From the IMG/VR virus record IMGVR_UViG_3300031884_000002, positions 1 to 64,000 of that record: a stretch of 64,000 nt of DNA. The stretch is one strand, 5' to 3'. Under the pieces are notes generated by a model. It made no database searches. It had not been told where the DNA came from and saw only the letters and a list, made by a program, of their open reading frames with translations. Both the position numbers and the translations under genes were made by a program. Positions 20,935 through 63,223 of the stretch are shown here, in pieces (position 1 is the stretch's first letter; each line of letters starts with the position of its first letter).

Positions 20935-23456
20935 TTATACTGGTATAAGTGGTATGCGGTGAAAACTGTCTCGATTTGAGACAGTGTGGTATAATTGCTT
21001 AGGCTTGCGGTGAGTTCATTAGCATATTTAATATGCTATTAATCACAACTTTATCAGAGTTTGCCGCACGATAAGCCATTGGTGCAAATCCGTTAGGTGA
21101 ATTGGAATGTGCCTTGCTCCACAATTCAATCCTATCATTGGTACTATGTTCCTTCATGATTTTTAATGCTTCATCAATATCTTTTATTCCATTGGTGCCA
21201 CGCCAAAGAACCATATAAGAACGGTTTGATAAGGTTGCTTCAATGAATAGATTATTGTTGTTTTGCATATGTAAGAGAATATAGATTTAAATCTATTTGT
21301 CAACCGTAAATCACTTCTTTAAAGATTGCCAGTTGAATGAATGCGTCAAAATCCATTGCATCACAATTACAGAGCCAATTGTCCCAAGTATCAAAGTTGT
21401 TTAGATTGGTGCTAGGTGGCTGAGTACAGCCTTTAGGCCACTTATCCGTAAAAATCAAAGGGAACGTTGCAATAAGCATATCCTTGCCAACGGCATGTTT
21501 TATTCCAGTGTCTTGGTTGATAAATCCAAATAACCAGTTTTTATAATTCCAGTCAATACATTCCAACGATGAACCTTGGCTGGCTTCTGGAAAGTTTGCC
21601 ATTATGCCTTTGACTACGGATTCAACTGTTTTGTCGTTAATTTCAATGGTAATTTTCATATGTTATAGAAATTGGTTTTTATTGTGCGGTAAACTCCATC
21701 ATTGTGCCATTGCGGATTTGACGGGCATTGCGGGCCTTGTTAAAGGTCTGACACCGTTCCCGGGCTTGTTCATAAGTCAAGCCGGTATCCACCGTGGTTT
21801 TCCGGCCATTGACAAAGGTTGTCCAATTGGTGCAACTACGTTTGAATGTCTTGTAAAATGTCATAGTCGTAATATATAGATTTAAATCTATTTGTCAAAT
21901 GTTAAGAGTGCGCCACGCATCAAAAACCGCCCAACTATGAAATTGCTTCTTACGTTCCTCAATTGAGGTTCCGGCACACTCCCACAAATCCAATCCACCG
22001 CATTCGGCAACTGTTTCGTCATAGAATGCTTCGATTAAATCTTTATGGATAGGGTCATTTTCAAAATCAATGTCTGGCTTATCGCCACCTGTCCAAGCTC
22101 TACGTTGATAGGTATGTCCTAATTTGGTTGTTATGGTGTATGGAGATGTCATATGTAAGTAAAAGAATATAGATTTAAATCTATTTGTCAATGGATTTTT
22201 GATAGTTATGCATTTATACTGGTATAAATGGATATAGCATAATTGCCGCAGTCCAGTTACGAACCACGGCAACTAACACATATGAACCGCACCAAAATTA
22301 AGATACCAATTTGTCTTGAATGTTAAACAAATCCAGTGCCAATCGAGTACATTCGTCCATTGATACTTTTATTGGAAGATAAACAGGTGATTGAATAAAT
22401 CTTAGCATATTCGTTCCTGATGTTACTCCAGCCCAACGAGAAAGCATTCGAGCTTCTTTTACAGTCAATTCCAAAATAACTTTTTCAATTTGAGGTGGTG
22501 GAGGCGGCTGCGGCACAGATTTAATAGTTGTTACTTTCATATTCAGTATATTATAGATTGTTTATTGTTTGTCAATTCAATTCCAGCAAGGTTTAAACTT
22601 TTCTTTGCGGCTGTAATTCTTTTTGCTTTCGACCCGCTTGGTTACGGGGTTTAATACTCCCCAAGTTTTACGGATGCGAATGTCGGCTTGTTTGATTGTT
22701 GTTTTCATATGTTGATAACAATATATAGATTTAAATCTATTTGTCAACCTTCAATGTTCTGACATTCCGTTATATCAAAGGTTTTGGTAAAATCCTTGCC
22801 ATTGGTCAAAATCAAATCCAATTGGCTTGAATAGTATCCATTGTTATATCCATGTCCAGCAACCCGCACAGGATGCCCATGAATAGGTAGCAATTCAATT
22901 CCATAACCATCGACCCGCTTGAAAAAAGCATCAGTTGACAAATCAAACTCCAATCCGTCAAAATCTGCCAGACTCAAATCATGAAAATACAATCTCAAAT
23001 CATGAAAATACAATTCATGAAACTCACAACAATCTTGACTGTGATAGGATAATAATTCAAGTCCATTGTCAAAGATAATTCCATAGTTATTCACCACGAC
23101 AACCTTGGATTTATTTAAATTAGATATTTGTTCCATATGTGAATACAGTATATAGATTACTGAGTAAAAGTCAATAGAAAATAAAACTATTTTTGCCGCA
23201 AGTAATTATACTGGTATAATTGCTATTTTAAGCGAAGTCCATTCCTCATCTATAATATAGATTTCAATTTAAAAGTCAATCACAATTGATATTCTTTTTT
23301 CAAATATTTAGCAAGGTGTTTTACCGTTTTCAAAAAGCAACGTGCCTCATATTTAGTCAGTGTATGAGTTTTCTTTCGCTTGCGATTGCGGAAACATCGG
23401 ACAGAAAATGTATCATTCATAAGTAAAATTATACAGAATTAAATCTATTAGTCAAA

Positions 23457-23490
23457 TAAAAAAGTTGCCTAGTTTTTAGGCTAGGCAACT
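23457..23490 (-). terminator. Intrinsic terminator
   Basis: AGTTGCCTAG-loop-CTAGGCAACT with an A-run on the left (U-tract on the minus strand). Confidence 0.75.
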
Positions 23491-23506
23491 CGTAACACAT
23501 ACACTA

Positions 23507-24040
23507 TTATACAACCACCAAAGTTTGCTTCATTGCGTTCATTTCAATCACATTGTTAAGCGTGAGACAATTCACGATAGGCTTAAATTCGCTTTCCTTT
23601 TTTGCATATAGCCAAGGTTTGAGGTCATCGTAAGCAATCGGCTTGCCAGTTTTGTCAAAATACTCCGAAAATAGAGTTTTATTGTGCCGATAGAAAAGAT
23701 AAAACTTTTCATTTGGATTTTTATTGATATGGACACAAGTAGGCTTGCCATCCTCATTCATCATAGGAACGTGCCACGATGTTCCTAGAGTGTATTCTAC
23801 TTCGCTGGCGTCAATACCAAGTTTCTTCGCCACGTTTTTCTCTACTGCCTTTTTGAATGAGAAATTGACCCAGCCATTGACAATCGCCCGCTTAAACACT
23901 TCGCCAAACGGATTTTTCTTCTTAATATCCGTAACCGGAGTTACGGCTGTAACCGTAATAAATCGGGATTGAGTTCCGGCATCCACCGTAAGAAACTTAA
24001 CCAACCCAGCAACCGTAAGTTTTTGTATAGCTCGTTTCAT
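23507..24040 (-). CDS. Hypothetical protein (177 aa)
   Basis: ORF with A/C-rich leader, own promoter and terminator. Confidence 0.75.
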   Translation of the reverse strand: MKRAIQKLTVAGLVKFLTVDAGTQSRFITVTAVTPVTDIKKKNPFGEVFKRAIVNGWVNFSFKKAVEKNVAKKLGIDASEVEYTLGTSWHVPMMNEDGKPTCVHINKNPNEKFYLFYRHNKTLFSEYFDKTGKPIAYDDLKPWLYAKKESEFKPIVNCLTLNNVIEMNAMKQTLVVV

Positions 24041-26233
24041 ATTTTTTATTTTTTGGTGTTATGTGTTACTGACAAAAGAGATAATATAGATTTTTAGATT
24101 AAAGTCAAATGTTTTCAATCAAAATTAACAGAATCTTCAAAAATATTATTCAACCGGATGCGAATAGTATCTAACTTTGCCGCAATATTAGGATACTCAA
24201 TAACATCTTCAGCCGTTAATTCGCCAGTGATAATCAGAACATTTTCAATGGCTTCTTTGATAGATTGCTCGTTAAAGTTCATAGTTGTAGAATATAGATT
24301 TTTAGATTAAAATCAAATTAAATCCAGCCATTTTCTGATAGTTGCATAGTAATCATATTCCAAACCACGAGCCAAACAGACACCCTGAAAAAATCCAACA
24401 GTGGAGGAAATCACATGTATTTTACTGGTGGGCGAGTCTGCCAATGATATACATGCGGTCTTAACATTACTATCAATATGTTTAACCAATTCTTCTAAAG
24501 TGCAAGTTTTATAATTCATATGTTCCTAAAAGAATATAGATTTAAATCTATTTGTCAACCGGAATCGTAAAAATCATTAACACCACTTAGACCAATATAA
24601 ATGGAGTTTTATGCGGTGAAAATAGGTTGCATTTATACTGGTATAATAAGGTGTTTAAAAGGTTGGCATATGAGAATAGACAAAGACTCATATGCCAATT
24701 TGAAATGCAATTTATGAAAACAATAACTAAACAGACGATAGCACCAAAATTAGACGGTGACAACTTCAGCCAGCAATTCAACATCGGGTTTATTATTCTT
24801 GCTGGCATTCTTAACACGGCGAATATAACCATTCATCTTCAAATCATGCCGCTTGTTAATCTCATTCAATGTCTCAATATGGTTAATGATGAAATTGGCA
24901 GCTTGAAGCGGAGAAACAGAAGTTGCCATATTAACATTCAGCTTGGAGGTTACGAAATTGCGAACTTCAATCAGACGTTCGTGAGAAAGTGCGTCCAATT
25001 CATTCGTAAAGGTTTTTCCATCGGTGGTTTCGTATGCGATAACTTTTTTCATTTTATTTTTTGGTTTATTGTTGTTATGTGTTACTGACAAGAAAGAGAA
25101 TATAGATTTTTATTTAAATGTCAATCAGATTTCAGTGTAGGCCACAGAAATATCAATTGGTGGTTTGGAAAAAATCCAACCATCGGAATTAGTAGTATTG
25201 TGAGTAGAACTATATTTCTTCTTGGCTTTCTTCTCAGCCGCATTGTGACTGCCAGCTTTGATATAACCGGTTTCAACTCCATTAACATAGACGATGTAAG
25301 TTTTCATATGGTTAAGAATATAGATTTTTATTTAAATGTCAATCTTTTCCTTCAATTCTATCTTCACTCCAATCATCATAATCAGGTTCATCCATTTTAA
25401 CCGTATCGGCCCATTTATCAACATTGGCTTCAATGGCAGCTTCAACCGATTTAATTTCATCCGGTGAAAATCCAGTTTTATTCCAATCCCATTCTTCAAT
25501 GTAAAAATAAGTAGTGCCACGGTCAACGCCCTTGCATCCCCAGTACTCATATGCTCCGATTCCATCGTTTTCCCAGTCCCCTTTGGTGGTGACTTCAATT
25601 TCAACTTCATCTTCGCCACGAGTTGGAAGTTCAACGGATAGTGTAAATGTGTTAATCATAGGATTAGAATATAGATTTAAATCTATTTGTCAAATGAAAT
25701 CAGCAATTTCAATTGCCTTTTCAATATATTCTCCCTTAAGTTCTGCCAATTTACAATCATAATCAAATCTTAGTTGAATCAATGAGTTTCGGATTTTAAC
25801 TCCAGTATCATATGGCAAAATTGCCTTTGGCTTGAACCAGCCCATATAAGATGGAGAATAAACCAATCCTTCATCATTTAGTTTAGTTATTTCAGCACCC
25901 AAGATATAGGGGAACTGGTCATATTTCCAAAAAGCCATTAGTCGTGTATTCATAAATGTAAGAATATAGATTTATATCTATTTGTCAACAGGTTTTTGAT
26001 AATTATGCATTTATACTGGTATAAGTGGTTGATTACCAATTATATAGGTAGAATTAGAATGCGGTGAAACTACTCAGTGAATACTTGAACTAAATTACGC
26101 CACGTCGAAATTGTCTGTTTAAGAAGAAAATCCTTAATTGCTTTCTTTTGCTTACGAGAACATTTAGCATTCATAAGTTTTTTATTATTCTTCACATAGT
26201 ATAAATATAATCTATAAAATGTCAAGTTAAAAA

Positions 26234-26340: not shown

Positions 26341-26349
26341 ATTAAAATT

Positions 26350-26602: not shown

Positions 26603-27390
26603 TATATACTACCGATTCTAATCTATTTGTCAACTGTTTTTACGAAACATCCACTTAACCCGAACCATGTTTGTTTGCTGGCAGAAATAAGTTTTAATCT
26701 TCATTTTGTTTATTGGTTGTTTGTTGTTACTGACATAAACAAGCATACAGATTAAAATCTATTCGTCAATCATTATATTCCAACAGGAATTGAATGAGAG
26801 AAGTCCAATCAGGCAAGGGACCATCACCAAAGGAGTTATTAAACTCAGGCGTGTCTGATACAGTAACCCATTGATTCTTATCAGAGTTCCACTGCAATTT
26901 CAACTGATGTTTAACCCAAGAGTCTGGATTTCCAACCTCAATGGCAAATGTATTGTCTTCAAAACGTTCAATGTTAATATTATTCATAGGCGATAAGTAT
27001 ATCAGGAATAGATTAAATGTCAAGGGAATTTTAAAGATATAATTTACTCTAATAGTTGTAGTAGAAGCACTTATACTGGTATAGATAGTATAACAAAAGA
27101 ATGCCGCACTTTTAATGCGGCAATCTATTCGTAGCTCTTAATTCCCCACCTTGCCAAGATTATCTAAACCGCCAACCAAATCCAAAATGAAACAGTTAAA
27201 ACATCTAAAGCAATGGACCAACCGTAAATGTTACTTACTAACTTTTGTTTTTCTGCTTGACTTTTGGACTTCATCATATTAAATAGACAAATCCAACCAA
27301 AACTTGATAGAATCGTCCAAATTACGGCTAAAATTATTAGAAATTTAATCATATGAGTATATTATAGATTTTTATTTATTTATTTATCAA

Positions 27391-27660: not shown

Positions 27661-28080
27661 AGTGTTAAAAGTATATAGATTGTTATTTATTTGTCAAGAT
27701 CCAAACGGTTCTACATTCCAATCATCATCTGCTACTTTGATTATAGTAGTTTTACTAATTGTTGAATCAGGAATACAAATCGCAACTTTGCGAGACCAAT
27801 TACGAAATATACGAAAATAATATTTTACACCATCAATGGTTACTGGATCTATTCTGCAAACTACGGAATAAGATACAGAAAAAGGTCTTTTATCATATTT
27901 AAGATGCGCTTGAATATAATCTGTTACTGCCCCACCGCACGAACCAATTGAACAATATGTATATGGAATTTTCATATTTGTATTTTATAGATTTTAGAAT
28001 AAATGTCAACAAAAAATAATTTATGTTTTTTGGTAGAGCACTTATATGTATATAAGAACACTCTACCAGAAAGGTAAAAT

Positions 28081-28885: not shown

Positions 28886-29980
28886 ATTAAAAAGAAATCA
28901 AAGTTTTTACCACCAATCAACTTAATTACTGTCGATTGATGGCTAGGGTTATCCACCTGTTTGCTGCAACCAACATCTATATAATACCGATTAAATCTAT
29001 TTTGTCAACTGTTTTCAGCTAACCGCCCAATTAAGTTTCTCCGCATAATTCCACACTTCATTAGTGGAAAACGTGCCATCCTCATTTTCAACTTGAACGT
29101 CAACATTGGTATGATTTTTGAATGCGGCTGTAATGGCAAATTCCAGTCCGGTATGGTCCACTGGGAAGGTTAGGGTTTCAGTTTCAGTTTCAACGATGTA
29201 GTTTGTTTGTTTCATAGGTTATATATTATAGATTTTTAGTTAAAAGTCAATCAACAATTGGATTATTTTCCCAAGCTGGTGAAGTGCCATCAGGATTATT
29301 ATATTCATACTGAAAAAATCCTCCAATGTCACCACCCAAAGGGTTATTCTCAATAATCTTATCAATACAGGAATAACAGTAAGGATTGTTTTTAAGGACA
29401 ATATCATCTACCCAGTTAAGTGTTGTCATATTTAAGATTATAGAGATTATTGTTTATTTGTCAATTTATTTGCGGTTAATTCTTTCGTAGGTTCTGGCAA
29501 TGGCTTCCAGTATGCAGATGAATAATAGTAATGAACCAACCAATTTCATTGTCAATGTTTCTTTTGATTTCTTTTACAGGTTTGAAAAGAATGCTTGGAA
29601 GTTTTCTTTTGCCGGAATCCATTACGATGAGCCACTGGATTTTGCCAGCAAGGACCATCATTATAGATGCTGCGGTTGATGTAAGTGTCACCGTATATAG
29701 TTTCTTTTTGCATATGAGTAGAATATAGATTTAAATAGATTTGTCAATCTATTCTGGTATATATTTTATATTTCATCGTAGGATAATATTTCCTCAAATC
29801 TATTACATAAGAATTTATTTCTTCTAATGTATGAAACTCCTGATAATTTGTAATTCCATTATAATAACAGTCAATTCGTACAATATATTTCATAGTGTTA
29901 AAAGTATATAGATTAGAATTAAAAAGTAAAGAAAAATACCGGAATATTTATTAGACATTCCGGCATTTTTTACTTGATTT

Positions 29981-31664: not shown

Positions 31665-34600
31665 AATTTTTTATTTTCTATTCGTTACGTTTAAGAGTAT
31701 ATCAGATTAAATCTATTTGTCAATCACTTCCGTTACAATTGGAAACTTCATATCAATAATATCAAACCCCATTTGTTTAAAATAATCCATAACACCGTTA
31801 GGGTCGGTTTGCCAATCACGTTTAAGTTTTTCAATGCTTTTCTTTGGCATTTGGAGAATAATCGAAGTTTTTGGTGTTTTCATATTTAAAATTATATAGA
31901 TTTTAGGTTAAATGTCAAATTTAAATTGAAGTCCTCTTTCCTGCTGGATTTGTTTAGCCGAATTAAAATCATCACTACCATAGGTAAATGAACTTAATGG
32001 ATGTTCGTAATATTTACAGCCACAATAAGCACATTGTCCTTTTGGTTCTCCCATATCATCACAGATAGCAGGGTCTTCAAGGTATTTTCCACAAGTGGTT
32101 AAAATGATTGGTTCACGCATATAGGTATAGAATATAGATTGTTATTTAAATGTCAATAGAATTTTTGGGAGTTGACAAATAGATTTATATCTATATACTG
32201 CTTTAACTATGAACGACAAAATACCACATATTCCTAAACTTGCAAGTATTATCTACTGGAAGGATACCGCCGAAAAGGAGCGAGTCGAGCGGTGGATTAA
32301 GAAGTTAATGGAACAGGGACATATCGAAGCCCATACTACAAGGGAATACAATTCTTATTGCGGTGAACCAGTATGGTTTATACCGTGATTATTCCATTGA
32401 CATTTATATTTTAATCTATATACTTTATCAACTATGAAAATTTACATTTATCATCGTTTCAAAAATTGGTGTCCTCCCCGAACATTTGGAGTGGAATGTT
32501 ATGGTCCATTTAATTCGGTGAAAGGTGCTACTTTGGCACTGGAATATCAAAAACGTGTAAATGCCAATACGGGAGAATATCTTAGTTCGGTGAAAATCAT
32601 TCGTAGAAAAAATGAACCAGAGTTTAGAACTTTGGAATGGCCGGATGTCTGTAAGTCAGACCGACGGTTTATGGAAGATAAAAAAGATTGGCATTTGATT
32701 TGACATTTAAATAATAATCTATATTCTATAAACATATGAATGATTTAACTGCTAGAGAACATGCCTATGCCATCACAATGGCTGTTAATACACTGGTTTC
32801 CGCCATGGGAATGGTAGCCGAAAACAAACAACGAGAAATTGAAGGTAAATCTATGGCATATACCGAACAACAATTTAATGACTTAATTCTTAAGAATGGA
32901 TGTCACCATAATGGTGTTTTAGGATTAAATTGGAATAATTATTGACTTATAAAAAATAATCTGTATGCTTTAAATATTATGAATCTCAAACAATATACTG
33001 TCGGTGAAGTTACATATGGTTATTCTCTTAAATCCAAGAAATGGGAGTTTAAGATTAAGGATTTTACTTTTCTTTCTCCTTGTCCCGGTGGAAATGAAAT
33101 GGGTGAAAAGTTTGCCAAAATTGTTGCGGCAGGTTACGTTCGCACTAAAGGAAATGGAATTGGTGGTCTGGCACGGTCAAACATTGACAGACTGCTTGCG
33201 GTGAAATAATACTATGAATAAAAAAATTGTTGAAAAAGCACTTGAAGCATGGGATGAATATAATTCATTTGTTAATTTTAAACCTACCAATGAAAACTTT
33301 GATATAATTAAAGCGGCATTTATCAAAGGTTATATTTGGAAATGTGCCCAACTTGAAATCGAAAAATTTCCAATGTGAAATAATTATAGATTGACACTTT
33401 CTCGTAAACCTGTTATTATGTTGCCATTATGAATAATCAATGGCAATTTAAGAATGGGCTGAATACAACGGAGTTTCAAACTTTTCCGTTGGCTTTCAGG
33501 GCAATGTTTAATTTAGTCCGCAAAGGCGTCGAAGATAAGAAGCCGGTGGATACGTCAAAGTTTTCAATTGTTGGACCTAAAAATCCAAGAGGTGAAAACG
33601 TGCGTTATAACTATAATCAGGCAATGGAGTTTGCCGGTTCATTTGGTTTGGTAAACCAAGATGGATATTTGAATGGTAAAGAGTTTAAACGTAAAAACAG
33701 TTGACAAATAAAATATAATCGGTATAGTTATTTGTGTTGGGAGAGTACCTCAGTGGTGATTTGTGAAAATGTTAATCTTAATACCTTGACTTTTGGCGAA
33801 GACTATACTATAATTCAATATCCTTAATAACATATGCATATTCACAAACAAAATATTTTAAATCTAAAAGATGGAGAAGTTTATTTTTTAGATTTAGGCG
33901 AAGAGTCAGGTGCTGAGGTTTGGAAGAAAAATGACCTTTACTTTTTATTTGACATTCCTCAATATGGAGGCACTCCAACGTATTGTGGACATTTCAATGT
34001 ATTAAATATTGACGACGCAATTAAAAATGTGTTATCTTGGACTTAATTATTATGAATAAACAAGAACGACTATTGCGAATTAAAGCATTTGCTGAAAAGC
34101 AAGAAATAGAAACTACCATTCTATTTTCTGAACTTCCATTCTCCAAGCAGGAAATTGAAGAAACGGTTAATGATATGGAGGCATATACCGAACATAAAAG
34201 AAATGAAAAAGAAGCATTGACTTCGGATGAATAATCCGTATAATTAAAATATGAATACTACACGAGCAATCTATATTGGAAACCGATTTAGCCGAAATAA
34301 TTTTACGGGTGATTATAACAAAGATACTTGGCAATTCTTTCCCGATGGAATGCCAAACTTTGATTTTTTCACTGGGCCTAATTTTGTTTATCTTCCTCAT
34401 GATTGTAATGAGTGGGATGATTCTGATGAAGCCGATAAATCAATTGCAGGTTATATTACTTTACCGATATGATGTTTCTATTCCCGTTCGGGAATACTTT
34501 ATACAATTATACTAATATAATTAGTAATGTTACCGCTCGGGTATTTATACTAGTATAAATGGTATATCAGGCCAACTTTTATTTTTAATTTATAGTTAGC

Positions 34601-35713
34601 TACAATGGTAATCCTACCATCATCCATCTGATTAAATTGTTGCTTTTGCTTTGGCTATGATTTCACCAGCTCGCTTCATTGCGGCAATAACGGATTCATC
34701 GCCTTCAACATCACAATTTGACCCTAATCCTATTAAATATAGGGATTCAAGTGCTTCAAGCACTTCATTATATTCAATATGATTTTTCATAGTTTTAACA
34801 GTATATAGATGTTTGTTTATTTGTCAATATCAGATTTCCGATACAGTTAAATACAAATCGATTTTAGGAGAATCAAAATAACCTGTTTTAATAATTGCTT
34901 CAATATCCTCATCATCTAAGACATAACCAGTATCTTTCAATTTTTCACTAAAACAAGCCTTGGCTTCTTTAATACCGGCTTCATCATTTACAAATGAAAT
35001 AATACCGTCGAGGACTCCGTTATAGATTGTGATTACGTTAATGGTTTGAATTCTCATAGTGTTAAAAGTATATAGATTTATTCTTAGTTGTCAACTTGGT
35101 TTTTTATTATCACCTGCAATTTCAATCCATCGAAGAGGATGATTAGTTTTACGAAATGGGGTTACATTAACTGGATGGCATAGATGACTCATAGGTGCAT
35201 TTTCCCAATGAATATCAGGCCAGCATACTATGCCACTTAGAGAATCATTAAAAAAACTTTTACCTACTAAAATACCAATTTTATTGACATCTGGTTTATA
35301 TCCAGATTCTTTCATCCAGTGTTTACTATGTTTAACTAAAGTTCCAATCGGATAATCGGTAAAGTTTACGATTTTCATATTTAAAAGTATATAGATAAAA
35401 ATCTATTTGTCAATAGGAAAATGCCGCTTGACTTTTAGATGATAATCTATATACTTTTGACTATGAATATTATACGCACAATTTTTACAGACCATAAAAG
35501 CGGTGACATTTCATATGGATTTCGAGCCTATGATGATACGGGCTGCACATATTGCACCGGAATGCTTCAAGATGAACTCTTATATAAGGATGAAAACTTT
35601 CTAATTCTTATCATTGAACAATATGCCGATGAAGTATTTGATGATATGTTTAGAGTTTCCGATGAAATTATCATTGATGATACAAACTATAATATTGATA
35701 GGAATATTGAACC

Positions 35714-36358: not shown

Positions 36359-36365
36359 TTTTAAT

Positions 36366-37092: not shown

Positions 37093-37120
37093 CCGAACTG
37101 ATTTAGTTCGGTTTTTTGTT
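37093..37120 (+). terminator. Intrinsic terminator
   Basis: CCGAACT-GATTT-AGTTCGG followed by TTTTTTGTT. Confidence 0.8.
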
Positions 37121-38010
37121 TTATAGCATTTATACTGGTATAATAAAACATCCATTTATACCAGTATAGTTAGTTTAATTAAGTAAAAAATACATTTGAC
37201 ATATAGATTTAAATCGGTATTCTATTGGCATATGAAAAAACACATTAAATGTATAGTATCAGTTACAAACTCAAACGGTGAACCTGATTTGTTTTTTATT
37301 ATTGTCAATGCAACAGAGGAACAAATTGAAAATGGGGAACATTACGATACTGCAAAAGATGAAGCTTGTGATTATGGATACGAGCCTTATTTGGTGTATG
37401 ATGAAAATGATTCGGCTGGCAAATCTATGCTTTCATTATTTCAATGGGAAACTGCCTCGGTGATTGAATGTAATTGACAAATAAAATACAATCTATATAC
37501 TCTTAAATATGAAAAACAAAATACCATGTTGTAAAATTACCAATCCAGTTTTGAAAAAAACATTGGCAACTCTAACTAAAGAAAATGGCTATCCCATTGA
37601 TGAACGATATTGGGATTATGACAGTAACAGTGCTATTTTTTTCGTGCCAAACGATGAAGTAAATCGGGGTGCTGGATTTGCTTTTACTAACTTGACAAGC
37701 TATAATAATTCAAGCGGTGATACTGCCTTTAAAACGGTTTCTATTGAAGAAATGTTTGATATTATGTCTAAACCTTATGAGGCTCCATTTCAGCCTATTG
37801 AGGTGAAATTGAATGATGAATATACCGCTAAAGTTCAACGGGATGGTTCGGTGAAAGTTGGATGCCAAACTTTTCCTATGCAATCGATTGTTAGTCTTTA
37901 TACCGCAGTCCAATTGGTAGTATCTAAAAATAATATTTGACAAATAGATTTTAATCTGTAAACTTTACATATCGTTAAAAACAAAACAACAAAAAACAAA
38001 AAATTAAATT

Positions 38011-43907: not shown

Positions 43908-44390
43908 ATTACCGACTAAAATAGATTATACCGATTATTTATCAGAAGTCAACAACTTCCAAAGCGATATGACACAAATCCATACTCCGATTTATGAAAT
44001 CCTAATTCTTCTAATCGTTCAACCTCATCGGCTAATACTTTACTTGTATCACAAGTTACAAAAAAATTATCATGTTCACAATGAGTTGGAGCATAATCAT
44101 TGTTATATTTAGATAGAATCGTAAGTGCTTCGATTAAGTCTTTCATATTAAAGAATATATAGATTATTATTCCGAAATCAAGGTTAATTGACTGGCATCA
44201 CAATCCCACACATTATCATCTTGGTCCTTAACTTGAATATATCCACCTTGTTTATATCCAATAACAACACCTTGAAACTCATTGAGAAAATCACCATCCA
44301 ATGGTTCAGCAATTACTTCAGTTCCAATTTTAAATGTTTTCATATTAAAGAGTATATAGATTATAGATTGGAAGTCAATACATAACCAAC

Positions 44391-45071: not shown

Positions 45072-46589
45072 ATTATTTTAGTTGTTTTTTGTGTTATTTA
45101 AGTGTTAAAAGTATATCAGATAATAGATTTTAGTCAATGACTAATTCTATTCAATTCATCTCTAATTCCATTAACAATATTATCAATATTGATTTTAGTA
45201 TCAAGCAATGAAACATCCTTATGTTTATAATTAAAAACAGATTGATTTATATACTTTTGAGCCTGATAATAAGTAGCGTGTCCCAATACACCAATTATAA
45301 CAAGGATTTCATCCTCATTCAATTCAAGTTTAAAAATCCGAGGAGGTTTAGGCTGCGGCACAATTTCCGATGTAATTTTCATAGTTAAAACAGTATATAG
45401 GTTAAATTTAAAATGTCAATGATTATTTTTCTTTGGGTAAATTGTGCCAGCAATCCATAATATGTTCAATTTCAGTAAATGTCAATGCCAGACAATCATC
45501 ATTATTCAAATTTAATTCCGGCTCACTGCCATCCCATGCTATTACATAGCCAATCGGAGTCAAGCCAGATGAAAAGATTAAAACATCTTTATTCCATTTA
45601 CATTGTATATTCATAATAATTTAATTTGCCAATGTAACTTGTCCGCTATAAATTGCCCAATGAGATTCTTTAAAGGGAACTGGACCTACCTCACTTACCT
45701 CACTTCCAATGGTTACATATCTGCCAGCATTATTCGCTTCAGCGGGAATATGGATAATCGTTCCATTGTTTTCATCTCTAGCCAAGACAATTATTCCTTT
45801 CCAAGATCCGGCACCACCTCCAATTGCACCCAGATGAATAAGTAAGCATGGATAATTTCGAGTTTGTGTATCGTTAGTAATAGTAGCAGTAGATTTCATA
45901 GATAAATACATTATACCGATTTCATTTCCTGAGTCAAGTGAATATTCCAATAGTCCGAATTACTCAATATCGCATAATAAAATCCCTTGGCGGCATCCAA
46001 AGAGTCAAATTCTTGAAAGTTATTTTCCCAGCATCCACAGTCCCCATCATCAAATCGATTAGGATGATTATAAACCCTATAAATTACAAAGTATTTCATA
46101 ACTTCTATACTATAGATTTATTTTATAAAGTCAATATCTTTATTTAATTTAACCACATTAAATGGTTCGGTTCTGGTAATATACAATCTATTTTGAAACG
46201 AATATTCAATTTTAACTTTTTGTGGCGTAAATCCAACAATTTTAGCCTTAATAATTCCTTTATATGTGGGAGGATTAAAAGCAATTGAATCTCCTTCATT
46301 CAATTGCATTCCTGAAATATCATTCATATAAATCTATTCTACCGATAATCTGACGATTAGCAAGGAAAATCTTACGATAATCTGACGATACCACTTATAC
46401 CAGTATAAATGGGTAAATTAGCATTTATACCTATATAATAAGAGAGGACCACTTATACCAGTATAATAAGCAATCTTTAATAAAGAACCCTATATATAGA
46501 TAGATATATAAATCATGCGGTGAAAAAATCTATATTTTTAGTGATTTTATAGTATATGTATAATTAGTATAAAATAATAAACTAAATAT

Positions 46590-51988: not shown

Positions 51989-53535
51989 ACATTAAACAAA
52001 CTAATCATAATCATTATTATTTTATAAACAGACGGTTTTTGATTAAATGATTCACACCATACAAATAATAGGAAAATATTAAGGATTAAAAATAGAAGGT
52101 TCATAGTTAGTAAATTACAAATATAGTTAATATTAGAAATAATGCAGCAACCGTACCAATAATCGTTCCTAACATATTTAATTTTAATGAATTGTTAGAT
52201 TTCATAAAAGCATAAAAATTAACACCTGCCATAAATGAGTTAAGGTATAGAAGACATAATAATGTTAACATGATGATTTAGTTATTTGATATCCCAGTTT
52301 CCAAGTATAAACTAAAAGTCGAATTGGATATTCTGTTCCTCTATATTCAAGATATACAGTACAAGATTTCTGAATCCATAGGTCATCTTCTTTAGAATTT
52401 TCATCATCTTTAAAAAGATTTTTATCCAGAGGACGACTCCATGGGTCGAGCCATCCGTCTTCGTCTAAGTCACATTCTTCCGCAAACCAAGTAGTATCAA
52501 CTTCGTTAGCCCAGTTGTTACTGGTCTGAGGATATACCAAGTTCATTTCTCCCTGTGATAATTTTTTCATCATAAAAACGAGTATAGAGATTATAGTTTA
52601 TAAGTCAAGGAAAAAACCACCATCCGCCACTATTTCCACTATTTTTACATCCATTGTTACTGTCTTGTATGTTTACAAAAATAAAAAAAGAAATAATACC
52701 AGTTACCAATATAACAGCACCAATCCCAGTTATAATTGGATGAAGGTCAAACCAATTAGGAACATAAGGAGTAGGAGGACCATATAAATAGTTATCCAAT
52801 TTACCAGCTTCACGATTAACAGAACCGGCTACATGTTTTCCTAAAGTAAATATATTATGCATATCACGGAATAGGATGACCTACTTTAAATCCTAATTGT
52901 AACAATTCATTCCACTTGATAGTTTTAATTTTATCAATTGGAATAGATGCAATTATTTTGGCATTATCCCAATGAGAAGTCCAAGACGGCATTGGTTGTC
53001 CCAATTGACATTGGCAATATAAATAGAAATGAGGATATTCATCCTTATTATAATTATCAGGGTCAACCGGAACCATCATATCTGCGGCATCCGCAGGTTT
53101 AATTAACATTGAAGGAAAAGCAATCATAAATAATTTTAGTTTAAACTCCAATATCATCAGAACTTTCTGCCAATACATTACGGACTTTTTTAAGGATGTT
53201 TTGCCGCTCTTCCATCGTAGCAGGAAATTGTTCTACACTGGTTGAAAATCCATAACAATTTATTTTAGTAATTTCATCGAGATTAGTTTCATCGGGAGAA
53301 TTAAAATGATACATTTCAAATGGAATAGGACAAGAACATCCACTGTCTTTAGCATAAAATACACGCTTGGATTCGGGATGTTGCCATACTGCCAAGATAT
53401 TAAACGCATAATCAAGCGGCTCGTTTAATTCATCGACCAACACAAGATTACAGGCTTTTGGATTATAATAAGGATTTTGTTCGTAACTCATAATAGTAAA
53501 AGTATAGAGGTTATATCTAAAATGTCAAGTATGTT

Positions 53536-57702: not shown

Positions 57703-59647
57703 ATTATTTTAAATTATTAGCCCAAATTGTATTTCCTTGCATTTTTGGATATCCCATATCATTCATAAGTCCAAGTGCATTTAAACGATGGTCGGAATAT
57801 TTTTTACGTCCCTTAAAACTTTTAAGTTTCCATAACTTTTTAGCATCGGAACAAAGAACATCATCGGAACAATTACATTTGTTATTCATAAATATCTCCA
57901 TCGGAGTCCCTTAAATCTTCAGCCCATGCGTATTCCATAATAATTTAATCGTTAAGTAGTTCCAGTAACCGTTTAAGTTCTTGCTTAACCAGTTTTAATT
58001 TTTCATTTTTTTCTTTACAAATACAAAATATACACCAGCCCGACTCAATCAGGGAAGGACTCATTGAAACTTTACATATCATGCAAGTTTCCCTGCATTT
58101 TTCAACATCAAAATCATCGTCAATATCATTCATAAATAAAAGGTTTTCCCAAAAGTCCATAGGATTTTCTACATAAAAACGTTCCAAGTCCCATAAATAC
58201 TGCATCGTTAAAATTAGATTTATATCCATCTTTAAACTGCGAATGGAAAAGATCAAAAGATATAGTCTCCGTAACTTTAACTTGACTTCCATTTACATTA
58301 TAAATGCAATATCCAGCCAAATCTTCCTGTTTTTCAGAATACCAACAATAATTTTCATTTTTCATAATCTCAAGTTTATTTATTTTAGAAATCCATCCAG
58401 TTTGCCACGCATAAAACTCATGAGTATTTTGTTTAAAAGGATTTTTATAATTATGTCCAGCACATAATTCTCCCATCTCATACGCCTTGATAGCAATCAT
58501 TCTCTTATAATCAGATTTATCAGTCATAACTTAATTAGAGTTTCAATTGTATCAACAATCTGTTTAATGTGTTTTTTAGATTTAAACTCTCCCGACCACA
58601 TTACTGTGCCGCTCAATTCATCTCTATCACCAGCAGCAGGAGCACAACATCCACTTGGAACTAATGAAACTTTATTCTTCTTGTATTTAGAATAATTTTC
58701 TTTAGATAACTTAAATACTTCAACATTTTTAGGATATAAATTGCTTATTACAATAAATGTATATAATTCCGGTATCTCTTTCTTATAAAGAGAATGACAA
58801 TTGGATTGAAATAAATTACAACCAACAAATCCCAATTCTTTTACTTGATTTAATCTAACTGTCATAATTATTTAATACCAACACATTTCATCATAATGTA
58901 TTTAGTACACATTTTAGTGGGACAAAGTACATATTGTTTATTATCACCTAAGTATTTTATATCAAAATAATCAGCCTCAACTTCACAGCCACAGTTTTCA
59001 CATGTTCCTCTATAATAGAGTTCGGTTAATTTGGGTAATGTTCCTTCTTTAAGTATTTTCATGTTTATAGTCTATAGATAAAATCTAAATTGTCAAGTCT
59101 GATTTGTTCTCCTACATCCATACATATATCCATAATAAAAAGCATCTGTCCATAATTGAGCCGGAATAATATCGCTTACATCTGTGTTTTTACTATATTT
59201 ATTCCAATAATTACATTTAGCCTTGTTAAAGGCATTACATTTTTTAATTTTATCTTTAAGTTTCATATTTCTCGCCATCTCCTGATTTTAAAATCGGCAA
59301 CAATTCATAAAATAATCCACACATAGTCCTAAAATCATCATCTTGCTTTCGGGATAATGCTCCTATATGTAAATCATCAATATTATTCGTAATACATTCT
59401 AATCCACATTTAATATTGTTAATATGACAGATATAATCTTCATATCCATTTTCGGTTAATATATCTTTTGGATTATACATAATTTTAATTTAAAAAAGTA
59501 AAACATTCTCTATGGTCACATTCCCAATGTAGCGCACTTTCACGTTTAGCAATCAGAGATTTACGATATGCCTTCAATCGCTTCAAATCCATTGTTTTTA
59601 GATTTTTAAATATCATGAGTGGAATAATACAGATTATAAATTATAAG

Positions 59648-60100
59648 TCAAGGATGTAATTTCAAGTGTCCCAATATTGGGTCAAGTTCTTCCTTGGTTC
59701 CAAATATATAAGCACAAGTAACTTCAGGACGGAAAATAGTAAATGTTTTATCCTCTTCATTAAAGATACTGAGACGTGGTATGATTTTTTTAGTATCTAT
59801 TAAATTATAGACTTCCGATGTAACTTTGATACTATATTCTGGGTCAGCTACATAACTTAATATATTAGAATGTTTATATTCACATTTAAATACTTCTCGT
59901 ATTTCGTGTAATGATGCCGCCAAAACAATAGCAGTTCCAAATCCTTGACAGGTTTGATTTTGCCATTCTATTACATCTCTCACATGTCCGTGTTGTTTAA
60001 TAAAAGCATTGGATGCATGAGATGCTTGAGCCATTGCCCTTCCAGTTGTCATAGATGACAAGTCAGTTCTCATTAAAATATATAATCGGGTATCTTTCAT
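59648..60100 (-). CDS. Peptidyl-tRNA hydrolase, Pth2-like
   Basis: LYILMRTDL.SMTTGRAMAQASHA...IVL. Confidence 0.75.
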   Translation of the reverse strand: MKDTRLYILMRTDLSSMTTGRAMAQASHASNAFIKQHGHVRDVIEWQNQTCQGFGTAIVLAASLHEIREVFKCEYKHSNILSYVADPEYSIKVTSEVYNLIDTKKIIPRLSIFNEEDKTFTIFRPEVTCAYIFGTKEELDPILGHLKLHP

Positions 60101-61050: not shown

Positions 61051-61521
61051 TTAAATAAATCTAACAGGATTGTAATTACAAATAAAAATATCCAAAGTAC
61101 TATCTTTAAAGATTTCGGTAATAATGGTATTACAGATATTCCAACTTCCGCCGCCTAAAGTGCATCCCATATTTCGTGGAATAGCCAATGATTGTAGTCC
61201 CTTTGTGATTACATCTGATTTAACATATACTAATCCAGTATAATATGCCTCATAATTAGTTTGCCGCTTATGCGTTCCCAAATCATATTGAGAATACATG
61301 TTATAAATCCATCGTCCATCTTTCTTTCCTTGGACGATACTACAAGTTCCCAGTTTTTCCCTATCTCCATATTTAGTTTTTAAATCAGAGTCATATGCTT
61401 CGGGATAGATTGTTGAAACTCTGGCAGCAATTCCACCTCCCATAGCATGGAAACAATTACATTGATGAACCATCGCATCACATTGTTGTTTAAAAATATC
61501 AATATCAATTTCAGTAATCAT
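61051..61521 (-). CDS. Macrodomain (ADP-ribose binding/hydrolase)
   Basis: HQCNCFHAMGGGIA...YNMYSQ...IPRNMGCTLGGGSW. Confidence 0.9.
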   Translation of the reverse strand: MITEIDIDIFKQQCDAMVHQCNCFHAMGGGIAARVSTIYPEAYDSDLKTKYGDREKLGTCSIVQGKKDGRWIYNMYSQYDLGTHKRQTNYEAYYTGLVYVKSDVITKGLQSLAIPRNMGCTLGGGSWNICNTIITEIFKDSTLDIFICNYNPVRFI

Positions 61522-62500
61522 AAAAATATCAGTTAATACAAATTGAGTTTATTACAAAATCTTTTTCATATTCTTTTCTATACCATTCTGCTTCATCTTC
61601 TCCTATAAACTGTTTTTCATCAGAATCAAATTGACCTATTCCTCGATTTCCCCAAACTGTATCATATCTATTTCCTTCATCGTCCGATGAATAAATAACT
61701 TCCAAATCACCATGTTTATCTGCCATTTCTTGCAGTTCTTTAATATATTCGTTTAGTTTCATAACTGAGAGTATATAGATTTTAGGTTAAAAGTCAATGA
61801 TTATTTAATTGGTTCAAATGCCACTTGACAATATTTCGATAATGATTTTTTGCGGGGTCAACCAATTCATTATAGGGACAACCTGCTTTTCTTGGGTCGC
61901 CTGACAATCCATCCTTGGTAAGATTATCTTTGCGATTAGCACAGATAAAATCATATAGAGATTCGGCCAATTCTTCTTCGTTATTATTCATAAATCAAAG
62001 TCTATAGATAAAATCTAAATTGTCAATCATTATCGCCGCTATAATAGGCTTTCTGTTTTTTGATTATGTTAATTGGATACACACATTTCGGACAAGTTAT
62101 TAAAGGTGTGTTTGACTCTACATCCCATGCTAAAATAGTCCATTTACTATAATGAATATCTTTAGCATCCATAAAACTCATTGCTTTATTACAGATATCA
62201 CATTTAAGATGCCAATGATTAGCCATTATTAACTTGTTTTTCTAAATTATGATGAAACTTAAATGCTTCTTGTAATAATACAATCAAATGAAGAGTTTCA
62301 TCCGATGTAAATTTAAGTTCAATTTCATCAAATCCTTCTCCAACTTTAAGTTTTATGCCGCCATTATATTTAATTTCTTTAAGATTTATAGCATCATATC
62401 TATATTTTATATTGTGATTTTACTTCTATAGTAGATACGAGAAACATTACAGTTCCGGCAACAGACCACACTAACAACAATGCAATAATTATAAATTCTA

Positions 62501-63115
62501 TCATATTTTACATCCTTTATACATTTTCATTTCGTTAAGATTATAATGAAAACTAAAATCTGGTAATGATTTTTCTTTTATTCTATTTAAATACTTAGAA
62601 ATTGTGTCAGCGGTGCCACCATCCTTTAAAGTTTCTTTATCTCCAAACGTCATTGCCAGAATATAATGAGACATTGACACGTTAGTATTTCTATTTTTAA
62701 ACCCATGAACCACCGTAACATCGGCACCTTTATCTATTGCTTGTTGTATCTCTTTAATAGAGTTTTGTTTAGTTTCTTTTTCAAATTGACTATGATACCA
62801 GTTTGCAGTATCCGCAACTGTTCCAAAATCACTATAATTATCTATATAAGTTCCATTCTCATATTCACACGGAAGAAATAATTTAAGATTAGGCATTCTA
62901 TTATTAAGATATAATCTTACTGCTATCGAATCTGCGCCAGCCGCACCACCCGATACAAGCGTATTAAGTGGATATTTTTCTTTTAAATTTATATAATCTA
63001 TAAGTTTGTCTGCTACTCTATACATTTCATTATATAAATCAAGTGATAATTTATCATAATCATTATGACGAAATGCCGTTCCAACAATCGCAAGTGAATT
63101 TTCATCTTTTATCAT
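62501..63115 (-). CDS. SLOG-superfamily (YspA/DprA-like) protein
   Basis: AIVGT...LVSGGAAGAD...RNTNV...GGTADT. Confidence 0.75.
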   Translation of the reverse strand: MIKDENSLAIVGTAFRHNDYDKLSLDLYNEMYRVADKLIDYINLKEKYPLNTLVSGGAAGADSIAVRLYLNNRMPNLKLFLPCEYENGTYIDNYSDFGTVADTANWYHSQFEKETKQNSIKEIQQAIDKGADVTVVHGFKNRNTNVSMSHYILAMTFGDKETLKDGGTADTISKYLNRIKEKSLPDFSFHYNLNEMKMYKGCKI

Positions 63116-63223
63116 ACTTCAATAGTATATCAGAACATTTAGAAATGTCAATTGTTTTTATTCCAATTATAAATATGTTGTTATTTTTTGATTAAAATCA
63201 CTATATCTCTATATTTATAATGT

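What the first reader, a model, noticed from the sequence alone, without database searches (positions are those of the whole stretch)
20999..63152. Cassette-like architecture: each gene's TGA stop is the TGA inside the next gene's TTGAC -35 box
Seen: roughly 65-70 units of TTGAC-N~11-AATCT-x-TAnnnT-N8-10-ATG-ORF. In at least 24 the upstream stop codon lies exactly within the -35 hexamer: ORF ends at 21300, 21895, 22744, 24313, 25339, 25690, 26766, 27694, 29247, 32703, 32945, 33704, 35091, 37477, 37940, 39902, 42836, 43949, 45134, 52605, 59093, 59648, 61794, 62023. Known: integron cassettes often end their ORF inside the recombination site, and T4-like PeSL promoter elements mediate modular shuffling. 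Inference: the ~35-bp promoter doubles as a recombination/insertion site, so genes are gained, lost and reordered as self-expressing cassettes. No recombinase is visible in the window, and extreme compaction is the alternative.
Basis: partly seen in the sequence, partly recalled or inferred. Interest (0 to 1): 0.85.

Follow-up and report, generated by a model that had tools for sequence, protein, structure and literature searches.

The report
Promoter-bounded leaderless gene cassettes in jumbo phage
The early region of an uncultivated 354-kb freshwater phage is a string of about 65 tiny genes, each starting right after its own near-identical strong promoter, with many upstream genes stopping inside that promoter; related phages show that whole genes are gained, lost and moved with junctions inside these promoters, much like the PeSL elements of T4-type phages.

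Summary
In 20999-63152 there are 87 TTGAC-N16-TAnnnT sites, and 66 have an ATG 3-14 nt after the -10. Window-wide, 95 strict sites occur against 12.5 expected by chance. All 24 listed ORF ends are TGA stops inside the -35, 23 in TTGAC and one in a TTGAT variant. I found two or three more.

The window is the first 64 kb of a 354-kb jumbo-phage contig. The units are sigma70-type early promoters fused to leaderless or nearly leaderless ORFs. 131 of 149 ORFs have no Pfam match.

Relatives at 75-99% nucleotide identity show frequent gain, loss, replacement and reordering of promoter+ORF units. At least nine indels have in-register, chimeric promoters at the junction. Crossovers map to the conserved AAATCTATAT (extended -10), to ATTGAC, or to the -10/ATG edge.

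No tyrosine, serine or HUH recombinase lies in the window, and crossover points vary. The mechanism therefore looks like short-homology recombination between promoter repeats (PeSL-like), not integron-like site-specific recombination.

The TGA-in-TTGAC overlap is mostly compaction, parallel to 18 ATGA overlaps. Its frame is still over-represented: 28/53 here and 65/122 clade-wide, against one third expected.

Verdict: partly supported; a new variant of a known kind.

The parts
20999..63152 (.). Hyperplastic early-gene array. About 87 sigma70-type promoter sites (63 on -, 24 on +), 66 of them followed within 3-14 nt by the ATG of a small ORF. Coding density is about 84%.
   Evidence: 131 of 149 window ORFs have no Pfam match
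21276..21303 (-). Promoter TTGACAAATAGATTTAAATCTATATTCT (palindromic-spacer type). Its TGA is the stop of ORF 21300-21659. The ATG of ORF 20999-21268 follows 7 nt after the -10.
21871..21898 (-). Promoter whose -35 holds the TGA stop of ORF 21895-22152. The overlap is conserved in the orthologue L152 10512-10757.
22720..22747 (-). Promoter whose -35 holds the TGA stop of ORF 22744-23136.
24289..24316 (-). Promoter with variant -35 TTGAT, which holds the TGA stop of ORF 24313-24519. The orthologous site in L154 has TTGAC and an identical spacer.
25315..25342 (-). Promoter whose -35 holds the TGA stop of ORF 25339-25659. It is identical to the neighbouring promoter 25097-25124.
25666..25693 (-). 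Promoter whose -35 holds the TGA stop of ORF 25690-25953.
26742..26769 (-). Promoter whose -35 holds the TGA stop of ORF 26766-26987. It is followed by a conserved CA-rich leader. The overlap is conserved in L154 3231-3449.
27670..27697 (-). Promoter whose -35 holds the TGA stop of ORF 27694-27975.
29223..29250 (-). Promoter whose -35 holds the TGA stop of ORF 29247-29429. Homology to relative R begins inside its spacer.
29720..29747 (-). Promoter whose -35 holds the TGA stop of ORF 29744-29893.
32172..32199 (+). Promoter that is the left partner of an indel. Relative L147 lacks 32218-32696 (two genes) and carries this promoter fused to the ORF that starts at 32736.
32700..32727 (+). Promoter whose -35 holds the TGA stop of ORF 32434-32703. 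It is the right partner of the same indel.
32942..32969 (+). Promoter whose -35 holds the TGA stop of ORF 32736-32945. Both flanking genes are orthologous in L147, but the 11-nt spacer is replaced (4/11 identical). This is a conversion-like patch.
33701..33728 (+). Promoter whose -35 holds the TGA stop of ORF 33429-33704. The overlap is conserved in L147 6477-6752.
35067..35094 (-). Promoter whose -35 holds the TGA stop of ORF 35091-35378. That ORF is absent in relative L150, whose single promoter is a chimera of this promoter's downstream side and promoter 35386-35413.
35386..35413 (-). Promoter that is the upstream partner of the 35091-35378 indel.
37474..37501 (+). Promoter whose -35 holds the TGA stop of ORF 37232-37477.
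37937..37964 (+). Promoter whose -35 holds the TGA stop of ORF 37509-37940. It is followed by a 46-nt CA-rich leader.
39638..39665 (+). Promoter upstream of ORF 39672-39902. Homology to relative L148 runs through this promoter and stops just after the ATG. In L148 an unrelated 95-aa ORF sits here between two near-identical copies (27/28) of this promoter.
39899..39926 (+). Promoter whose -35 holds the TGA stop of ORF 39672-39902. Homology to L148 resumes at its -10.
42812..42839 (-). Promoter whose -35 holds the TGA stop of ORF 42836-43069.
43925..43952 (-). Promoter whose -35 holds the TGA stop of ORF 43949-44146. It drives a non-coding transcript that contains a group I intron.
45110..45137 (-). 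Promoter whose -35 holds the TGA stop of ORF 45134-45382.
52581..52608 (-). Promoter whose -35 holds the TGA stop of ORF 52605-52862.
59069..59096 (-). Promoter whose -35 holds the TGA stop of ORF 59093-59278. It is identical to promoter 61999-62026.
59624..59651 (-). Promoter whose -35 holds the TGA stop of ORF 59648-60100.
61770..61797 (-). Promoter whose -35 holds the TGA stop of ORF 61794-61991.
61999..62026 (-). Promoter whose -35 holds the TGA stop of ORF 62023-62226.
22548..22575 (-). Promoter that aligns with two promoters of relative L152 (12727-12754 and 12952-12979). Those two flank a 64-aa ORF absent from the window.
20904..20998 (-). Intrinsic terminator hairpin plus the 20-bp palindrome CACTTATACCAGTATAAGTG at the 3' end of ORF 20999-21268. 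This block moves together with that ORF to a different position in relative L152.

Best explanation
The region is the host-RNA-polymerase-dependent (early) hyperplastic region of a 354-kb jumbo phage.

Each small ORF has its own near-consensus sigma70-type promoter: TTGACA, a 16-bp spacer ending in AATCTA, then TAnnnT. The ATG lies 6-11 nt after the -10, so the mRNA is leaderless or has at most a leader of about 5 nt.

Because the promoter fills the whole intergenic space, upstream ORFs run up to it or into it. The invariant TTGAC supplies a TGA in one frame, and that TGA serves as the stop for about 40% of upstream genes. This is mainly genome compaction, the promoter counterpart of ATGA start/stop overlaps. 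It is probably reinforced because TTGAC is the only in-promoter stop that survives exchange of the variable spacer.

The 28-nt promoters, with 11-13 nt invariant cores, act as dispersed direct repeats. The phage or host recombination machinery deletes, inserts, swaps and relocates promoter+ORF units at these repeats by short-homology recombination. This is what PeSL elements do in T4-type phages.

Shown: the promoter architecture, the stop overlap and its frame bias, the variable gene content, and the chimeric in-register junctions.

Inferred: early timing, leaderless translation, recombination (rather than selection alone) as the cause, and the reason for the frame bias.
For: Promoters and start sites:
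- 95 sites against 12.5 expected.
- 53 promoters have an ATG 6-11 nt after the -10, and only 1 of 61 promoter-proximal genes has an SD-like motif.

Stop positions:
- Stop offsets relative to TTGAC: 25 at +1, 12 elsewhere inside the promoter, 15 at -3 to -15.
- TGA contexts: 25 in the -35, 18 in ATGA overlaps, 16 free.
- Frame bias: 28/53 (p=0.003); 65/122 across lineages (p=5e-6); 37/69 without the window.
- In-promoter stops are skewed to +1 beyond what stop availability in the other two frames predicts: 25:7:5 against 15.9:11:10, p=0.01.

Gene turnover:
- Relatives at 75-99% identity show unit-wise gain, loss, replacement and reordering.
- Three-way alignments show chimeric single promoters. 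L156:3448, L163:14396 and L156:16264 have crossovers inside AAATCTATAT. L163:11326 against R and L166 breaks exactly at ATTGAC, which is also the stop of the upstream gene. L147:5921 and L150:784 against the window switch at the -10/ATG edge.
- A 542-bp insert in L156 is flanked by a 55-58-nt promoter+leader duplication. It is absent from four other lineages.

Other support:
- Adjacent promoters have more similar spacers than random pairs (p=0.002).
- A spacer is replaced between orthologous flanks at 32942.
- PeSL precedent: PMC2839356 and PMC4122927.
Against: - Homology-block ends are not enriched in promoters once compared with gene boundaries in general (p=0.2). Selection for intact genes could therefore place the breakpoints there.
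- Some indels do not use promoters. These include a 10-nt GTGAAATAAT repeat at 33210/33375, an intragenic fusion at L163 11152, and TnpB and homing-endonuclease insertions.
- The shared cores are short (6-13 nt), shorter than the homology usually invoked for homologous recombination.
- The L156/L158 difference involves a Logan (k=31) contig and a 55-nt exact repeat, so that one variant could be an assembly artefact.
- No transcription, translation or recombination was measured.
- The host and the recombination genes of the phage are unknown, and only 64 kb of the 354 kb was examined.
Confidence: 0.65

Rival explanations
1. Compaction plus selection only. The promoters are just promoters. Indels arise by illegitimate recombination anywhere, and only those that leave genes and promoters intact survive. 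The stop in the -35 is the end state of deletion-driven compaction.
For: - Block ends are no more frequent in promoters than in other non-coding or boundary positions (49% vs 42%, p=0.2).
- The TGA excess vanishes after removing -35 and ATGA overlaps.
- Stops also occur inside the promoter in the other two frames, at +8, +12, +14 and +15.
- Non-promoter indels exist.
Against: - Nine of about 25 indels are exactly in register, against roughly 5% expected for independent breakpoints (p about 2e-6).
- Out-of-register products are evidently tolerated. Tandem 'empty' promoters exist at 23279/23174, 41204/41289, 56087/56060 and L163 9172/9277.
- There is a promoter+leader duplication flanking an insert.
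- Neighbouring promoters are more alike than random pairs.
- The frame bias exceeds the random-frame expectation.
Confidence: 0.22
2. Integron-like site-specific recombination. A dedicated recombinase encoded elsewhere in the genome recognises the promoter, for instance the ATAGATTTAAATCTAT palindrome, and excises or inserts cassettes.
For: - About 18 promoters carry a perfect or near-perfect 16-bp palindrome in the spacer.
- One junction falls exactly at ATTGAC in two independent assemblies.
- 290 kb of the genome was not examined.
Against: - There is no tyrosine, serine or HUH recombinase among 149 window ORFs.
- Crossover positions differ between events: the extended -10, the -35, the ATG, or upstream of the -35.
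- Junction promoters often lack the palindrome.
- The palindrome is thermodynamically weak as a hairpin.
- Rfam finds nothing but tRNAs, a tmRNA and an intron.
- Unlike integron cassettes, the cassettes carry their own promoters.
Confidence: 0.06
3. The apparent gene-content differences are metagenome assembly artefacts caused by the repeated promoters.
For: - Promoters are repeated about 80 times.
- One variant (L158) is a k=31 Logan contig that differs across a 55-nt exact repeat.
- Some scaffolds contain N runs.
Against: - Most junctions share only 6-13 nt, far below assembler k-mers.
- Independent assemblies from JGI, ENA and Logan agree on each lineage's structure. W-type contigs are 100% identical over 21 kb, and R contigs are 99% identical to L163.
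- The flanking genes are diverged orthologues, not identical repeats.
Confidence: 0.04
4. TGA in the -35 is not a stop but is read through or recoded, which would fuse neighbouring ORFs.
For: None specific. TGA accounts for 43% of stops.
Against: - The downstream ATG is in frame with the TGA in only 8 of 20 cases, no more than chance.
- No suppressor tRNA is among the 8 tRNAs.
- Orthologue conservation ends at the TGA while the downstream sequence is unrelated.
- Each downstream ORF has its own promoter-proximal ATG.
Confidence: 0.02

Closest known systems
PeSL (promoter-early stem-loop) cassettes of T4-type phages (Arbiol et al. 2010, PMC2839356; Comeau et al. 2014, PMC4122927)
   Same: - Many copies of a strong sigma70-like early promoter are concentrated in a hyperplastic region full of small ORFans.
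- The upstream stop codon is treated as part of the motif.
[quoted passage not shown]
- Insertions, deletions and replacements between related phages have chimeric motifs at their junctions.
- Recombination needs only short homology.
   Different: - The phage is an uncultivated 354-kb jumbo phage, and a T4 relationship was not shown.
- The spacer palindrome is AT-rich and weak (-2.2 kcal/mol), not a G/C-rich terminator.
- Only about 7 of about 55 units in 20.9-40.8 kb have a real terminator upstream.
- The promoter abuts a leaderless ATG, with no SD and no 5' UTR.
- The stop codon lies inside the -35 itself in about 40% of junctions.
- The conserved extension is AATCTA rather than TGn.
- Mini-circles were not tested.
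Integron gene cassettes with attC sites
   Same: - There is an array of small, mostly unknown ORFs.
- ORF ends overlap the repeated element.
- Gene content varies unit by unit.
   Different: - No IntI integrase is present.
- No attC hairpin architecture is present.
- Each unit has its own promoter instead of a common Pc.
- Both orientations occur.
- Crossover positions are variable.
Morons of lambdoid phages (Juhala/Hendrix; cited from my own knowledge)
   Same: They are self-expressing extra genes inserted between neighbours, each with its own promoter.
   Different: Morons are sporadic, carry dissimilar promoters and terminators, and are not bounded by a repeated recombinogenic motif.
ATGA start/stop overlaps in compact operons
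   Same: A 4-nt overlap of a TGA stop with the next functional signal. 18 such overlaps occur in the same window.
   Different: Here the overlapped signal is a DNA-level promoter element, not a start codon, so no translational coupling is implied.

Membership tests
PeSL-type recombinogenic promoter cassettes | A repeated strong sigma70-like early promoter concentrated in a hyperplastic region | tested here: met
   - 95 sites against 12.5 expected.
- 59 sites share TTGAC-N11-AATCTnTAnnnT.
- Exact-pattern matches in the 354-kb contig fall only at 11.7-70.3 kb and 335-349 kb.
PeSL-type recombinogenic promoter cassettes | An associated stem-loop that works as a transcription terminator | tested here: not met
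   - The spacer palindrome folds at -2.2 kcal/mol, z = -1.2. Non-palindromic promoters fold at 0.
- Only about 7 good terminator hairpins lie just upstream of promoters in 20 kb holding about 55 promoters.
- Terminator function itself cannot be tested here.
PeSL-type recombinogenic promoter cassettes | Association with ORFans and variable gene content between close relatives | tested here: met
   - 131 of 149 ORFs have no Pfam family.
- Relatives with 75-99% identical shared genes differ by dozens of unit indels and replacements.
PeSL-type recombinogenic promoter cassettes | Indel or replacement junctions lie in the motif, giving chimeric motifs | tested here: met
   Nine in-register junctions; chimeras were resolved for six of them. 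Caveat: there is no enrichment over gene boundaries in general.
PeSL-type recombinogenic promoter cassettes | Formation of excised mini-circles | not testable with these tools
   This needs reads or inverse PCR.
PeSL-type recombinogenic promoter cassettes | The host genome is a T4-like myovirus | not tested
   Only an RnlA-type RNA ligase (54919-56025) hints at T4-like content. Hallmark genes lie outside the window.
Integron | An IntI tyrosine recombinase adjacent to the array | tested here: not met
   The Pfam scan of 149 window ORFs found no integrase or recombinase family. It found only TnpB x2 and a GIY-YIG endonuclease. The rest of the genome was not examined.
Integron | attC sites: imperfect inverted repeats of 57-141 bp downstream of promoterless ORFs, with a fixed crossover point | tested here: not met
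   - The repeat is a 28-nt promoter.
- Its hairpin potential is negligible.
- Each ORF has its own promoter.
- Crossovers occur at several positions.
Leaderless mRNA genes | The transcription start is at, or within a few nt of, the AUG, with no SD | tested here: inconclusive
   The geometry fits: the -10 end to the ATG is 6-11 nt in 53 promoters, and 1 of 61 has an SD-like motif. No TSS data are available.

The most novel reading that the evidence does not exclude
The promoter is a universal two-sided adaptor. Its invariant -35 closes whatever ORF lies upstream through the built-in TGA. Its invariant extended -10 plus an immediately following ATG opens whatever ORF lies downstream, with no need for a ribosome-binding site. 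Any crossover within the roughly 22 bp between them would then join two unrelated units into two intact, expressed genes. On this reading the stop-in-promoter and the leaderless start are co-adapted features of a dedicated gene-shuffling architecture, possibly with excised mini-circles and a phage annealase. They would not be mere by-products of compaction, and the architecture would be conserved across a whole clade of freshwater jumbo phages spanning 31-44% GC.
Probability: 0.3. Interest if true: 0.8.

Novelty: new variant of a known kind. Interest (0 to 1): 0.55.

Why it matters
It extends promoter-mediated modular shuffling, so far documented for T4-type coliphages and vibriophages, to an uncultivated lineage of freshwater jumbo phages. 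It does so in a more extreme form. There are no untranslated leaders, no spacers, and for about 40% of genes the stop codon is borrowed from the next promoter's -35.

If the architecture is adaptive, it would help explain how large phages turn over their ORFan accessory genes so quickly without breaking neighbouring genes. It would also provide a natural design for scar-free, self-expressing gene cassettes.

The array of more than 60 putative leaderless early genes is a testable case for leaderless translation as a phage takeover strategy.

Tried and rejected
- Megablast of 20 kb against GenBank phages found only a 150-bp hit. That hit turned out to be a group I intron.
- The exact 28-nt promoter pattern in IMG/VR found only the source contig. 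A looser pattern gave mostly single chance hits, plus L008, L024 and L058.
- A protein-anchored search with ORF 23507-24040 found only the source contig itself. The RNA ligase search found mostly distant (about 35% identity) phages without the motif.
- The test that homology-block ends prefer promoters over other gene boundaries was negative (p=0.2). I report it as such.
- I looked for a clean rule that 'the -35 and spacer travel with the upstream ORF'. Several junctions fit (24313, 39652 and 34830 ends; 24519, 29215 and 39951 starts). Others do not (22577 and 31908 ends; 54396 start). I therefore claim no rule.
- The L165 vs L163 differences are 100-N scaffold gaps, not indels.
- Recoding of TGA was considered and rejected.
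- The spacer palindrome as a hairpin or terminator was rejected on folding energy.

Full report
**Source and context.** The window is the first 64 kb of a 354-kb viral contig, IMGVR_UViG_3300031884_000002 = Ga0316219_1000009. It has 31% GC and no close relative among deposited phages. It encodes:
- 8 tRNAs and a tmRNA;
- two TnpB/IS605-OrfB proteins, a GIY-YIG homing endonuclease, an RnlA-type RNA ligase, an ArdC-like protein, two ADP-ribosylglycohydrolases and a DUF932 protein.

Of 149 ORFs of at least 46 aa, 131 have no Pfam family. None matches a tyrosine, serine or HUH recombinase.

**Observation.** TTGAC followed at the right distance by TAnnnT occurs 95 times, against 12.5 +/- 3.5 expected. 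The family consensus is TTGAC(A)-N10-AATCT-n-TAnnnT, with a 16-bp spacer between the hexamers.
- In 20999-63152 there are 87 sites, 63 of them on the minus strand. 66 have an ATG 3-14 nt after the -10.
- For 53 promoters the distance is 6-11 nt, with a mode of 7. That places the usual start point at, or up to about 5 nt before, the AUG, so these are leaderless or nearly leaderless genes.
- Only 1 of 61 promoter-proximal genes, and 10 of 100 other genes, have an SD-like motif.
One (24313) lies in a TTGAT variant. I add 29744 and a doubtful 38-aa ORF ending at 26630.

**Is the stop overlap more than compaction?** Mostly it is compaction.
- Of 62 genes with a co-directional promoter near their end, 25 stop at +1 (the TGA in TTGAC). 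Twelve stop elsewhere inside the promoter (+8, +12, +14, +15, +24, +35), 15 stop 3-15 nt upstream, and 10 stop farther away.
- Of the 69 TGA stops, 25 lie in a -35 and 18 in an ATGA overlap. Without these overlaps the TGA share of the array falls to the 24% seen in the first 21 kb.

The frame that uses the -35 TGA is nevertheless over-represented.
- In the window it is 28 of 53 (binomial p=0.003 against one third).
- In five lineages together it is 65 of 122 (p=5e-6), and 37 of 69 without the window.
- The other two frames also find a stop inside 61-68% of promoters. In-promoter stops are still 25:7:5 against an expected 15.9:11:10 (p=0.01).

One plausible reason, which is inference, is that TTGAC is invariant while the spacer is exchanged. 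At 32942 the 11-nt spacer differs at 7 positions between genomes whose flanking genes are about 85% identical. A stop in the -35 is therefore the only in-promoter stop that is safe.

TGA recoding is unlikely. There is no suppressor tRNA, the downstream ATG is in frame no more often than chance, and conservation ends at the TGA.

**Relatives.** A promoter-pattern scan of JGI metagenomes and a DUF932-anchored look-up recovered four lineages:
- W-type contigs, 100% identical to the window over 21 kb;
- R contigs (Ga0114951, Ga0209083) and L163-L169, which are 99% identical to each other and 75-85% identical to the window;
- L156-L158, which are 93-98% identical to L163 in shared parts;
- L008, 78% identical over window 51.6-57.8 kb.

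More distant phages keep the same plan. L024/L058/L151 have 35% GC. L084-L086 have 42-44% GC and the promoter form TTGACA-N11-TGTGnTAnnnT. All have one promoter per small ORF, an ATG a few nt after the -10, and stops in the -35.

**Gene turnover.** Conserved anchor genes (65-95% amino-acid identity) are interspersed with unrelated small ORFs, each with its own promoter. Gene order also changes.
- The orthologues of 20999-21268 and 21895-22152 are in swapped order in L152.
- A gene in L156 (4588-5006) has its homologue 13 kb away in L163.

**Junctions.** Nine indels are exactly one or two promoter-to-promoter periods, with a single intact promoter at the junction in the other genome.
- Three-way alignments resolve chimeras. 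L156:3448 has the -35 and spacer of L163:6997 and the -10 and gene of L163:6673. L163:14396 and L156:16264 behave likewise. The switches fall inside AAATCTATAT(T), a shared 11-13 nt.
- L163:11326 against R, and the otherwise 99.96% identical L166, switch exactly at ATTGAC. That TGA is the stop of the upstream gene in both arrangements.
- Against the window, L147:5921 joins the 32172 promoter to the ORF at 32736. L150:784 joins the 35413 promoter to the ORF at 35057. The switch is at the -10/ATG edge in both.
- Window promoter 22575 aligns with two L152 promoters that flank an extra ORF.
- L156 carries a 542-bp GC-richer insert flanked by a 55-58-nt duplication of promoter plus leader. The insert is absent from W, R, L163 and L158.
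- ORF replacements leave both flanking promoters homologous. An example is window 39672-39902 against an unrelated ORF in L148, which sits between two 27/28-identical promoters.
- Neighbouring promoters have more similar spacers than random pairs: 5.15 against 6.0 mismatches of 12 (permutation p=0.002).

**Cautions.**
- Homology-block ends are enriched in promoter zones against sequence at large (24/64 vs 11%, p=4e-8). They are not enriched against non-coding or boundary positions (24/49 vs 42%, p=0.2). Position alone therefore does not separate a recombinogenic promoter from selection for intact genes.
- The argument for recombination rests on four things: in-register junctions (9 of about 25, p about 2e-6 if breakpoints were independent), the promoter duplication around an insert, the similarity of neighbouring promoters, and evidence that out-of-register products are tolerated. 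Tandem promoters without an ORF between them occur at 23279/23174, 41204/41289 and 56087/56060.
- Some events do not involve promoters. These are a 10-nt GTGAAATAAT repeat around ORF 33214-33378, an intragenic fusion, TnpB insertions and the homing endonuclease 40234-41136.
- The L158 variant is a k=31 assembly across a 55-nt repeat and could be an artefact. The other junctions share too little sequence for that.

**Comparison with known systems.** The closest known system is the PeSL of T4-type phages. [quoted passage not shown] They flank ORFans in hyperplastic regions and mediate indels, replacements and mini-circles by homologous recombination over short patches (PMC2839356 and PMC4122927).

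Differences here:
- The palindrome ATAGATTTAAATCTAT is weak as a hairpin (-2.2 kcal/mol).
- Real terminators precede only a minority of promoters.
- The genes are leaderless.
- The stop codon sits inside the -35.

The integron analogy fails on integrase, attC structure, promoterless cassettes and a fixed crossover point. Published transcript maps report no leaderless transcripts for phiKZ and 5' UTRs of 26-491 nt for AR9. The leaderless array may therefore be unusual among jumbo phages.

**Verdict.** The cassette idea is partly supported, in a PeSL-like short-homology form rather than an integron-like form. The stop overlap is mainly compaction with a reproducible frame preference. This is a new variant of a known kind.

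Noticed in passing
window 43701-43882 (-): A group I catalytic intron (RF00028, 52 bits, E=3e-12) lies downstream of promoter 43925-43952, in a transcript that looks tRNA-like at its 5' end. The same stretch is 86% identical to DNA annotated as a capsid gene in Pelagibacter phage HTVC120P. That suggests a mobile intron shared across unrelated phages.
   Followed up: partly
window 15248-15637 (-): A phage-encoded tmRNA (83 bits) with an unusual long tag, ANRLSQLAAMDEVDLSVDCEELAIA. There are also 8 tRNAs: His, Lys x2, Thr, Arg, Met, Ile. The tmRNA is conserved at 87% nucleotide identity in relative L152.
   Followed up: no
window 7353-8513 (+) and 16150-17301 (+); L163 2904-4070: Three TnpB (IS605 OrfB / Cas12f-like) genes with no TnpA. 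The 16150 copy is absent from relative L152. The L163 copy is a 1330-bp insertion absent from the 99%-identical R contigs, sitting 5-12 nt upstream of a -35. The IS elements are therefore recently active in these phages.
   Followed up: partly
window 40234-41136 (-): A GIY-YIG/NUMOD3 homing endonuclease lies on the opposite strand between early genes. It is absent from relative L148, so it is a free-standing mobile endonuclease insertion.
   Followed up: partly
window 20916-20953, 22195-22232, 23187-23224, 25992-26029, 27052-27089, 37111-37148: A 20-bp palindrome, CACTTATAC-CA-GTATAAGTG, with variants. It usually lies after a terminator and just upstream of a promoter, and it is conserved in relatives. 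As a hairpin it folds at -4.5 kcal/mol (z = -3.7). It could be a protein-binding site or a second repeat used in rearrangements, because it moves together with ORF 20999-21268 in L152.
   Followed up: partly
window 24040-24080, 25055-25096, 26700-26741 (-); also L024, L154, L156: A conserved CA-rich 5' leader of about 40 nt (TTGTCAGTAACACATAACA...AAAA) follows a subset of promoters in place of the leaderless ATG. It could be a translational enhancer or a regulatory RNA target.
   Followed up: no
window 26004-26069 and 31218-31283: A 66-nt direct repeat, 94% identical, contains the palindrome above plus TTTCACCGCAT. Its function is unknown.
   Followed up: no
window 23147-23279, 41204-41316, 56033-56087: Pairs of complete promoters lie 27-105 nt apart with no ORF between them. 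These may be 'empty' units, that is, scars of ORF loss or landing pads.
   Followed up: no
L084-L086 (IMG/VR contigs, 41-44% GC): Distant relatives (DUF932 71% identical) keep the one-promoter-per-leaderless-ORF plan, but with a canonical TGTGn extended -10 in place of AATCTA. The AATCT element is therefore a lineage-specific replacement of the TGn motif.
   Followed up: partly
whole window: SD-like motifs precede only about 10% of genes that lack a proximal promoter. Translation initiation in this phage, and presumably its unknown host, seems largely SD-independent.
   Followed up: no
source contig outside the window: Exact matches to the promoter pattern occur only at contig positions 11.7-70.3 kb and 335-349 kb of 354 kb. 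The promoter family therefore marks one contiguous region of about 90 kb on the circularly permuted genome.
   Followed up: partly
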